From the NCBI GenBank assembly GCA_044892505.1, contig CM097884.1, positions 80,476,001 through 80,540,000 on the forward strand: a stretch of 64,000 nt of DNA. The letters run 5' to 3'. Positions within the stretch are counted from its first letter, which is position 1. The number at the start of each line of letters is the position of its first letter. The translations under genes were made by a program, and so were the position numbers. Origin of the DNA: Schmidtea nova. Lineage: Eukaryota. Of the stretch, positions 3,149 through 3,392 are shown piece by piece. The notes below the pieces were generated by a model. That model was given only the letters and a program-made list of their open reading frames with translations, was not told where the DNA came from and made no database searches.

Positions 3149-3392
3149 AAATATTAATATCAAAAATTCCCATAATGCTAAGACTTCAGATCAACATTTC
3201 TTTAAATAAGTACACAATATTTCGGCACAGCCTTTATCAAGTGTGTAATACACAAATTGTAATACACACTTGATAAAGGCTGTGCCGAAATATTGTGTAC
3301 TTATTTAAAGAAATTTTGATTTATAGTCTTACCATTATGGGAATTATTGATATTAATATTAAAAAAAGATCAAAGGTGAAACAAAAAGATAA
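3149..3392 (-). repeat. Foldback (long hairpin) element, copy 1, subfamily A
   Basis: ~100-bp arms (3149-3247 and 3263-3360) are near-perfect reverse complements with a ~15-nt loop; unpaired tail AAAAAGATCAAAGGTGAAACAAAAAGATAA on one side. Confidence 0.95.

What the first reader, a model, noticed from the sequence alone, without database searches (positions are those of the whole stretch)
3149..3392. Multi-copy asymmetric foldback element whose two arms evolve together
Seen: five near-complete copies (3149, 14941, 17698, 38301, 41759) and two degenerate ones (36510, 38550). Each is an 85-100 bp near-perfect hairpin with a tiny, variable or deleted loop, plus a conserved unpaired ~35-nt tail (TCATAATTATCTTTTT(GT)TTCACCTTTGATCTTTTT) on one side only. 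Two subfamilies exist: A (CCCATAATGGTAAGACTATAG...TTTAAATAAGTACAC) and B (CTCATAATGACTATAG...TTTATAAACAATAACAC). The diagnostic changes, including a 5-nt indel, appear on BOTH arms of each copy. I found no TSD and no coding capacity, and two copies sit directly behind (TAT)n runs. Inference: one arm is templated from the other (foldback replication or arm-to-arm conversion) or pairing is under selection. The one-sided tail does not fit a plain TIR MITE and could be a recognition or nicking signal, or the element could be a hairpin-RNA source. The mobilising partner is unknown.
Basis: partly seen in the sequence, partly recalled or inferred. Interest (0 to 1): 0.75.

Follow-up and report, generated by a model that had tools for sequence, protein, structure and literature searches.

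The report
Tailed palindromic repeat, probably retroelement-derived
A short non-coding mobile repeat made of two mirror-image arms plus a one-sided tail is real, and its pattern of changes suggests that the second arm is copied from the first each time a new copy is made, as in Penelope-like retroelements, rather than the arms correcting each other afterwards.

Summary
The window holds five young copies, two subfamilies and several relics. Each young copy is a ~200-nt near-perfect palindrome (DNA fold about -92 kcal/mol, z about -22) with a ~40-nt unpaired tail on one side only.

- All ~10 changes separating the subfamilies are mirrored on both arms. All 34 copy-private changes hit one arm only, and no private substitution is mirrored. 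The arms are therefore identical when a copy is born and decay independently afterwards, with no ongoing arm-to-arm conversion.
- In every copy both arms start at the same inner position (two copies are shortened symmetrically). The far arm's outer end varies, and the tail end is always kept.
- Contrary to "no TSD", two of four complete copies have significant flanking direct repeats of different lengths (11 and 14 nt). In one of them the (ATT)n run lies inside the repeats.
- No fixed-length TSD, inverted copy of the tail, coding capacity, pol III head or hammerhead ribozyme was found.

Best reading (about 0.45): a non-autonomous retroelement copied from the tail end, with the far arm made by fold-back self-priming. 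This is the insertion layout published for Penelope-like elements.

Rivals are a foldback MITE, a Helentron-type element and a LINE-dependent retroposon. The host species and the partner element are unknown.

The parts
3150..3252 (+). Copy c3149 (subfamily A), far arm. The strand given for every part is the one on which the tail lies 3' of the arms.
   Evidence: Inverted repeat I4, 103 nt, 93%; profile positions 3-99.
3258..3360 (+). Copy c3149, tail-side arm.
   Evidence: profile 2-130 together with the tail.
3361..3401 (+). Copy c3149, one-sided tail: an A run, a conserved block up to 3392, then an A-rich end that differs from the other copies.
   Evidence: Alignments; tail 18-mer exact; unpaired in the fold.
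3146..3152 (.). Weak 7-nt candidate flanking repeat of c3149; its partner is at 3402-3408.
   Evidence: Not significant: P(LCS>=7) = 0.35.
14900..15152 (-). Copy c14941 (subfamily A): (ATT)n 14900-14936, tail 14937-14976, tail-side arm 14977-15064, far arm 15067-15152. The centre is shortened symmetrically (both arms start at profile position 7).
14886..14899 (.). 14-nt direct repeat flanking c14941; its partner is at 15153-15166. The (ATT)n run lies inside the pair.
   Evidence: P<=0.00025 in the general null and 0/4000 with the real left zone.
17647..17835 (-). Copy c17698 (subfamily B): (ATT)n 17647-17697, tail 17698-17735, tail-side arm 17736-17797, far arm 17798-17835. The centre is shortened symmetrically (profile 35/34) and the far arm stops early (profile 77).
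38303..38536 (-). Copy c38301 (subfamily B): tail 38303-38336, tail-side arm 38337-38434, centre 38435-38440, far arm 38441-38536.
   Evidence: (I5, 99 nt, 96%).
38292..38302 (.). 11-nt direct repeat flanking c38301; its partner is at 38537-38547.
   Evidence: P = 0.0035-0.006. Caveat: the right copy lies in the start of the neighbouring old copy.
38527..38735 (+). Old two-armed copy c38550, abutting c38301 far end to far end, with a degenerate A-rich tail at 38706-38735.
41756..41993 (-). Copy c41759 (subfamily A): tail 41756-41798, tail-side arm 41799-41898, centre 41899-41909, far arm 41910-41993 (about 10 nt short at its outer end). The weak 7-nt flanking repeat is at 41749-41755 / 41994-42000.
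36511..36650 (+). Old copy c36510: one arm plus tail, with no second arm.
   Evidence: Profile 3-132, E = 4e-20; reverse-orientation score at noise level.
23799..23855 (+). Fragment of one arm (inner part) running into the N run 23858-24100. The N run was left as it is.
   Evidence: E = 0.0012.
8616..8895 (-). Possible very old relic: degenerate tail, one arm and a weak second arm. Below the profile threshold.
   Evidence: 63-65% BLASTN; not found by the profile.
9354..9420 (-). Possible old tail-only fragment. It shares with c36510 an extra block between tail and arm.
   Evidence: not found by the profile.

Best explanation
The family is a short non-coding copy-and-paste element. Its heritable unit is one ~100-nt arm followed by a ~40-nt A-rich tail, read on the strand where the tail is 3'.

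New copies are made from the tail end inwards through a single-stranded intermediate. This is most likely RNA reverse-transcribed at a nicked, T-rich or (ATT)n-like target whose sequence pairs with the end of the tail. When the nascent strand reaches the inner end of the unit it folds back on itself and copies the first arm, which makes the far arm. The far arm is then joined to the other side of the target after a variable distance.

This yields a head-to-head inverted dimer with a tail on one side only and variable-length target duplications. The arms are identical at birth, whatever subfamily the template belongs to and wherever the first strand stopped, and afterwards they mutate independently. 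This is the insertion layout described for Penelope-like retroelements (PLEs), so the element would be a minimal non-autonomous derivative or passenger of such an element.

Shown: the anatomy, the mirrored and unmirrored change counts, the arm start and end positions, and two significant flanking repeats.
Inferred: the RNA intermediate, the self-priming step and the PLE partner.
For: 1. About 10 A/B differences (17 alignment columns, including the 5-nt indel) are all mirrored. There are 34 private changes on one arm only and no private mirrored substitution. Arms of different copies are up to 98% alike against 89-94% within a copy.
2. In all five copies the two arms begin at the same profile position: 3/2, 7/7, 35/34, 2/3 and 2/2. 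The far arm ends at 99, 98, 77, 100 and 90, and the tail-side arm always continues into the tail.
3. All incomplete copies keep the tail and lose the far end: c41759, c17698 and the one-armed c36510.
4. Flanking direct repeats of 11 and 14 nt sit at the element bounds (P about 0.004 and <=0.00025), and no fixed-length TSD exists.
5. The tail's end varies between copies: (ATT) repeat counts of roughly 0, 1, 21 and 21, or an A-rich variant. In c14941 the run lies inside the flanking repeats.
6. Nothing is conserved beyond either end.
7. Published PLE hallmarks are frequent 5' truncation, an adjacent inverted copy forming inverted repeats, a 30-40-bp tail often at one end only, palindromic head-to-head junctions read as self-priming, TSDs of 8-10 bp or none, and a microsatellite bias (PMC8557442; PMC3846280). 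Fold-back of reverse-transcribed ends has also been reported during LINE-1 TPRT.
Against: - There are only five young copies plus relics, from one 64-kb window.
- No reverse transcriptase, GIY-YIG or any other partner ORF was found in the window, and no other sequence there shares the tail.
- No hammerhead ribozyme was found by Rfam, and no direct (tandem) pLTR arrangement exists.
- Two of four complete copies have no significant flanking repeat, and the 11-nt repeat partly overlaps a neighbouring old copy.
- The far arm stops within about 3 nt of the arm/tail boundary in three copies. Free fold-back copying does not predict this without a defined stop.
- An inherited palindromic template with hairpin bypass by the polymerase would also give symmetric central shortening.
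- The host genome could not be identified or searched.
Confidence: 0.45

Rival explanations
1. Foldback-type MITE: a non-autonomous cut-and-paste DNA transposon in which almost the whole element is a terminal inverted repeat. The tail would be an extra subterminal segment on one side. The arms would be kept alike in the active source copies, either by fold-back repair synthesis after excision or by selection for transposase binding on both ends.
For: Near-perfect palindromes of ~200 nt without coding capacity are typical of MITE-like repeats. The window is full of DNA-transposon remnants: mariner, Tc1-like, pogo, piggyBac and hAT. Palindromes are prone to central rearrangement in situ. A 10-nt match links the start of the tail to the start of an old arm.
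Against: The tail end has no inverted counterpart, and the tail is unrelated to the arms. No TSD of 4 nt or more at fixed offsets is shared by even 3 of 4 copies, and the two significant flanking repeats differ in length (11 and 14 nt). None of the transposon remnants in the window shares the arm termini. All incomplete copies are truncated on the same side.
Confidence: 0.2
2. Helentron/HINE-type (DINE-1-like) or other rolling-circle non-autonomous element. It would be copied as single-stranded DNA from one defined end and insert into T-rich sites without a TSD. The arm ends would serve as giant subterminal inverted repeats and the tail as the 3' segment.
For: The geometry resembles HINEs: one inverted repeat at a terminus, the other ~40 nt from the opposite terminus, a short self-complementary stretch near that end, T runs at the boundary, microsatellite association and no fixed TSD (PMC4067079). 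The tail begins with TC after an A in 4 of 4 copies with a defined end, as canonical Helitrons do. A single-stranded intermediate would allow hairpin effects.
Against: There is no CTRR-type 3' end and no short hairpin in the canonical position. The microsatellite is terminal, not internal. Two copies have significant flanking repeats of 11 and 14 nt. The T runs lie on the strand opposite to that expected if the tail is the 3' segment. No Rep/helicase ORF was found in the window. HINE subTIRs are 12-15 bp, not ~100 nt.
Confidence: 0.12
3. LINE-dependent SINE-like retroposon, not PLE-dependent. The tail with its (AAT)n-like end would mimic the 3' end of a LINE with a simple-repeat tail, and the inverted dimer would arise by fold-back or twin priming during target-primed reverse transcription.
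For: The evidence is the same directional-copying evidence as for the best explanation. The tail ends in a degenerate then pure trinucleotide repeat of variable length. Inverted duplications and foldbacks at TPRT ends have been reported for LINE-1.
Against: There is no tRNA, 7SL or 5S-like head. T4-T8 runs inside the unit would hinder pol III transcription. The regular head-to-head dimer plus one-sided ~40-nt tail is described for PLEs and is said not to be seen in LINE TPRT (PMC8557442). The flank next to the far arm has the wrong polarity for priming on the internal A run. No LINE was found in the window.
Confidence: 0.13
4. The copies are not mobile units at all. They would be dispersed hairpin-RNA or miRNA-like genes, or assembly artefacts of palindromic reads.
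For: Strong hairpins; many sub-threshold Rfam miRNA-family matches.
Against: The Rfam matches are to dozens of unrelated families, on both strands and far below the gathering scores, so they reflect generic hairpin shape only. The copies have unrelated flanks, private one-arm mutations, subfamilies and relics of different ages, as mobile repeats do and artefacts do not.
Confidence: 0.05

Closest known systems
Penelope-like element insertions with inverted pseudo-LTRs and a one-sided 'tail' (PMC3846280; PMC8557442)
   Same: Head-to-head inverted repeat units with a palindromic junction; a 30-40-nt extension at the outer end of only one of the two; variable or absent TSDs; loss of the far (5') end; association with simple repeats. 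The terminal repeat alone suffices in cis for mobilisation in trans.
   Different: There is no ORF between or beside the repeats, and no direct (tandem) pLTR. The units are ~100 nt, against ~180-700 bp. Rfam finds no hammerhead. No RT/GIY-YIG partner has been seen. The tail is present in every oriented copy rather than optionally.
Animal non-LTR retrozymes, non-autonomous PLE derivatives (PMC7229834; bioRxiv 10.64898/2026.07.22.740005)
   Same: Short, non-coding, presumed PLE-dependent repeats derived from the pLTR region.
   Different: Retrozymes are tandem arrays, each unit with a type I hammerhead, and are thought to pass through circular RNA. This family is inverted rather than tandem and has no detectable hammerhead.
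HINE / DINE-1 non-autonomous Helentrons (PMC4067079)
   Same: Asymmetric ends, with one inverted repeat at a terminus and the other ~40 nt from the opposite terminus; T-rich sites; microsatellites; no fixed TSD.
   Different: The arms are ~100 nt and cover nearly the whole element. The microsatellite is terminal. Two copies carry 11- and 14-nt flanking repeats. No Rep/helicase partner has been seen.
Palindromic (foldback-type) MITEs
   Same: Small, non-coding, near-perfect palindromes present in many copies.
   Different: One end is not an inverted repeat; there is no fixed TSD; truncation is directional.

Membership tests
Penelope-like element (non-autonomous derivative) | Head-to-head inverted terminal-repeat units with a palindromic junction | tested here: met
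   both arms meet at the same profile position in 5/5 copies.
Penelope-like element (non-autonomous derivative) | 30-40-nt 'tail' extension at one end only | tested here: met
   A tail of ~35-45 nt on one side in 5/5 young copies and in c36510. There is no counterpart on the other side.
Penelope-like element (non-autonomous derivative) | Variable-length or absent TSD | tested here: inconclusive
   The 11-nt and 14-nt repeats are significant; the two 7-nt repeats are not. Only four complete copies are available.
Penelope-like element (non-autonomous derivative) | Frequent 5' truncation with the 3' end retained | tested here: inconclusive
   3 of 3 incomplete copies lose the far end and keep the tail. 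The sample is too small (P = 0.125 by chance).
Penelope-like element (non-autonomous derivative) | Partial direct tandem (pseudo-LTR) | tested here: not met
   No direct repeat of the unit occurs in any copy.
Penelope-like element (non-autonomous derivative) | Hammerhead ribozyme in the repeat (canonical clades; absent in Naiad/Chlamys) | tested here: not met
   No hammerhead family was found at gathering threshold or at E<=10.
Penelope-like element (non-autonomous derivative) | Autonomous partner with RT and GIY-YIG endonuclease sharing the terminal sequence | not testable with these tools
   None is present among 40 ORFs of the window scanned against Pfam, and no extra tail copies exist. The rest of the genome could not be reached.
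TIR MITE / foldback DNA transposon | Inverted repeats at both termini | tested here: not met
   The tail end has no inverted counterpart, and the tail is unrelated to the arms.
TIR MITE / foldback DNA transposon | TSD of fixed, superfamily-specific length | tested here: not met
   No TSD of 4 nt or more at fixed offsets occurs in at least 3 of 4 copies. A 2-3-nt AT-only TSD cannot be excluded in this AT-rich DNA.
TIR MITE / foldback DNA transposon | Autonomous transposon with matching termini | tested here: inconclusive
   None of the mariner, Tc1, pogo, piggyBac or hAT remnants in the window matches the arms. The genome could not be searched.
Helitron (canonical) | 5' TC after A; 3' CTRR before T with a 16-20-nt palindrome about 11 bp upstream; no TSD | tested here: not met
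   The 5' TC after A is seen in 4/4 copies. There is no CTRR end, and two copies have flanking repeats. Criteria are from PMC4067079.
Helentron / HINE (DINE-1-like) | 12-15-bp subTIRs (the 3' one 38-60 bp from the end), a short 3' palindrome, T-rich target without TSD, internal repeats | tested here: inconclusive
   The spacing geometry fits (tail ~40 nt). The arms are ~100 nt, the microsatellite is terminal, and two copies have flanking repeats.
SINE | Pol III-type head (tRNA, 7SL or 5S) | tested here: not met
   ARAGORN finds none. Rfam finds no such family even at E<=10.
Non-LTR retrozyme | Tandem units, each with a type I hammerhead | tested here: not met
   No tandem arrangement and no hammerhead.
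miRNA / hairpin-RNA gene | Match to a curated family, or small-RNA expression | tested here: not met
   Only sub-threshold generic hairpin matches were found. Expression is not testable here.

The most novel reading that the evidence does not exclude
The family is a minimal, hammerhead-less non-autonomous derivative of a Penelope-like retroelement: just one terminal-repeat unit plus the 'tail'. Its palindrome is rebuilt by fold-back self-priming at every retrotransposition. Each genomic copy would then be a natural record of the self-priming step that has so far only been inferred for these elements. The mirrored subfamily changes, the symmetric centres and the variable far ends would be its direct footprints.
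Probability: 0.3. Interest if true: 0.65.

Novelty: new variant of a known kind. Interest (0 to 1): 0.45.

Why it matters
If the reading is right, these small elements show in plain sequence how an inverted-repeat insertion is built in one pass: from the tail, to the centre, then back. That step of Penelope-like retrotransposition is still only inferred.

It would also add an inverted, ribozyme-free form to the known tandem, ribozyme-bearing non-autonomous derivatives. It shows as well that 'two arms changing together' can come from re-templating at birth rather than from gene conversion or selection on pairing.

If the rival MITE reading is right, the family is an ordinary unclassified repeat with an odd end. 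Either way it is a practical caution for repeat annotation, because a tailed palindrome is easily mis-filed as a MITE.

Tried and rejected
Finding the host genome or more copies (all failed):
- Word-based protein searches with two hAT-like ORFs gave only unnamed hits, or hits of 79% identity or less scattered across frogs, dragonflies, fishes and moths.
- Exact-product look-ups of two window ORFs found nothing on record.
- A search with the spurious ORF that crosses arm plus tail found no candidate.
- Exact-pattern scans of viral, metagenome and prokaryote-genome collections with the core (26-, 27- and 19-mers) and the tail found nothing, or single chance 19-mer hits without family context.
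- A literature search for four sequence strings found nothing.

Other tests that led nowhere:
- Empty-site test inside the window: the flanks have no paralogues.
- Internal-microsatellite idea (DINE-1-like): rejected, because nothing is conserved beyond the (ATT)n runs.
- Tail as a partial repeat of the arm: rejected.
- Twin priming on the internal A run: rejected, because the run flanking the far arm has the wrong polarity.
- Hammerhead ribozyme in the arm: a lead from memory based on the layout at 3262-3300, not confirmed by Rfam.
- My first impression that several old copies are one-armed was corrected. Only c36510 clearly is.
- The large 'palindrome' at 62748-63134 is an artefact of an N run.
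- A guess that ORF 14497-14748 is a Polinton-type ATPase got no Pfam support.

I also recalled other short textbook motifs while thinking.

Full report
WHAT IS THERE. The window is AT-rich (about 28% GC), contains five N runs that I left untouched, and is crowded with animal-type transposon remnants: mariner, Tc1-like, pogo, piggyBac and hAT. It holds no tRNA gene and no curated RNA family. BLASTN, pattern and profile searches all recover the same set.
- Five young copies lie at about 3150-3401, 14900-15152, 17647-17835, 38303-38536 and 41756-41993.
- There is an old one-armed copy at 36511-36650 and an old two-armed copy at 38527-38735.
- An arm fragment at 23799-23855 runs into an N run.
- Two doubtful relics (8616-8895 and 9354-9420) stay below the profile threshold.
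Full copies fold as single-stranded DNA at about -92 kcal/mol (z about -22) while the tail stays unpaired. One arm plus tail alone has no significant fold. Nothing is conserved between copies beyond the tail/(ATT)n on one side or the far arm on the other (all flank pairs z <= 1.4). The tail is not related to the arm in either orientation. The element is therefore truly asymmetric.

DO THE ARMS EVOLVE TOGETHER? I aligned all arms in one register and classified the variable columns.
- Seventeen columns, about ten events including the 5-nt indel, separate subfamily A from B. All are mirrored on both arms of the B copies.
- 34 changes private to one copy affect one arm only, and no private substitution is mirrored.
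- Within subfamily A, arms of different copies are up to 98% alike, more than the two arms of any one copy (89-94%).
Resident copies therefore do not homogenise their arms. Each copy was born with identical arms and has decayed since. The symmetry belongs to the copying process or to the source, not to the locus.

DIRECTIONALITY. In profile coordinates the two arms of each copy begin at the same inner position: 3/2, 7/7, 35/34, 2/3 and 2/2. This includes two copies whose centres are shortened by about 5 and about 33 positions, symmetrically to within one position. The outer end of the far arm varies (99, 98, 77, 100, 90). The tail-side arm always runs on into the tail. The clearly incomplete old copy keeps the tail and one arm. 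The simplest reading is that synthesis starts at the tail, runs inwards, stops at a variable point, turns back and copies the first arm outwards for a variable distance. An inherited palindromic template with hairpin bypass would also give symmetric centres, so this step is inferred, not shown.

ENDS AND TARGET. A scan of all fixed boundary offsets and TSD lengths found no TSD of 4 nt or more shared by even three of four complete copies. Letting the boundaries float, the cognate flanks of two copies carry direct repeats of 14 nt (14886-14899 / 15153-15166) and 11 nt (38292-38302 / 38537-38547), placed exactly where similarity between copies ends. Using the window itself as the null, such repeats have P <= 0.00025 and about 0.004-0.006. 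The 7-nt candidates of the other two copies are not significant (P = 0.35). In copy 14941 the (ATT)~21 run lies inside the flanking repeats. The last twelve bases of the tail are themselves a degenerate version of the same trinucleotide repeat. The very end of the tail differs between copies: no repeat, one unit, about 21 units twice, or an A-rich variant. Variable-length duplications and a variable simple-repeat end argue against cut-and-paste and rolling-circle insertion. They fit target-primed copying from the tail.

WHAT IT RESEMBLES. The published description of Penelope-like retroelements lists the following features (PMC8557442; PMC3846280).
- Insertions are frequently 5'-truncated.
- They often have an inverted truncated copy immediately adjacent, so that inverted repeats arise.
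- They show palindromes at the head-to-head junction that are interpreted as self-priming.
- They have TSDs of 8-10 bp or none, and favour microsatellites.
- The terminal repeat alone can carry foreign DNA in trans.
The present family reproduces the inverted pair, the one-sided tail and, less securely, the variable TSD, the directional truncation and the simple-repeat association. It does not show a direct pseudo-LTR. Rfam finds no hammerhead ribozyme in it, which canonical clades have but Naiad/Chlamys lack. No RT/GIY-YIG ORF or further tail copy exists in the window. Known animal non-autonomous derivatives of these elements are tandem and ribozyme-bearing, so an inverted, ribozyme-free form would be a new variant. 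I therefore say it works like a Penelope-type insertion (confidence about 0.45 for a tail-first, fold-back retroelement, and about 0.3 for PLE dependence as such). I do not file it as a proven member.

RIVALS.
- A foldback MITE (0.2) explains the palindrome and fits the DNA-transposon-rich context. It does not explain the non-inverted end, the lack of a fixed TSD or the one-sided truncation.
- A Helentron/HINE-like element (0.12) shares the end geometry, T-rich boundaries and microsatellite link (PMC4067079). It predicts no TSD, an internal microsatellite and short subTIRs.
- A LINE-dependent retroposon (0.13) shares the mechanism but lacks a pol III head. The regular inverted dimer with a tail is not a LINE trait.
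- A hairpin-RNA gene or an assembly artefact (0.05) is contradicted by the unrelated flanks, the subfamilies and the private one-arm mutations.

LIMITS. The host species could not be named, and no copy outside the window could be obtained despite protein, exact-product, pattern and literature searches. All statements rest on five young copies and a few relics. The N runs were not filled, and the arm fragment at 23799-23855 is therefore left incomplete. The profile search reported coordinates only.

VERDICT. The family is most likely a short non-autonomous retroelement with Penelope-type insertion architecture. That makes it a new variant of a known kind and of moderate interest.

Noticed in passing
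window 29624-30866: A 9-bp tandem array of 138 copies with 90% matches and strong negative GC skew. It creates long spurious ORFs in several frames, none with a Pfam match.
   Followed up: partly
window 62748-63134: The longest 'inverted repeat' in the window (193-nt arms, 98%) is an artefact of the N run 62772-63108. Five N runs exist (4932-5253, 6951-7430, 21028-21271, 23858-24100, 62772-63108), and all were left as they are.
   Followed up: yes
window 38303-38735: Two family copies of very different age lie far end to far end with their tails pointing outwards. The 11-nt flanking repeat of the young copy overlaps the start of the old one. This could be chance, nested insertion or a preference for inserting next to a resident copy.
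   Followed up: partly
window 3262-3300 and the equivalent block in other arms: This is the best-conserved block of the arm. It can be drawn as a short outer helix enclosing two single-stranded stretches and a 3-bp hairpin (MFE of the 41759 unit). The layout reminded me of a minimal hammerhead, but Rfam gives no hammerhead hit.
   Followed up: partly
window 37114-37291 and 55104-55701: Another repeat family. At 55.1-55.7 kb two ~80-130-nt inverted ends lie 363 nt apart, and a related single end lies at 37.1 kb next to a mariner-like ORF piece. It looks like an ordinary transposon terminus or TIR element.
   Followed up: partly
window 17836-20600: A GC-richer block begins exactly where copy 17698 loses its far end. 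It contains two ORFs (19257-19769 and 19942-20547) with no Pfam match and no exact product on record, and may be an unclassified mobile element.
   Followed up: partly
window 26493-28276 (-) and 50417-51987 (-): hAT-type transposase remnants. The first has Spin-doc zinc finger, DUF4371 and downstream parts. Its closest relatives (79% identity or less) are scattered over frogs, dragonflies, lungfish, fishes and moths, which suggests a horizontally spreading family.
   Followed up: partly
window 2059-2670, 39572-40224, 42404-42880, 45553-46496, 52912-53157, 60065-61036: Remnants of pogo/Tc5, Tc1-like (DDE_3), piggyBac (two pieces), a second pogo-like stretch (by eye only, no Pfam hit) and mariner transposase genes. 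All are fragmentary.
   Followed up: partly
window 48970-49151; 4162-4239: An 88-bp unit repeated 2.1 times (94% matches) and a perfect (TA)39 run.
   Followed up: no
window 14497-14748 (-): An 84-aa ORF whose sequence reminded me of a Polinton/Maverick-type packaging ATPase. Pfam gives no match, so this remains an unconfirmed impression.
   Followed up: partly
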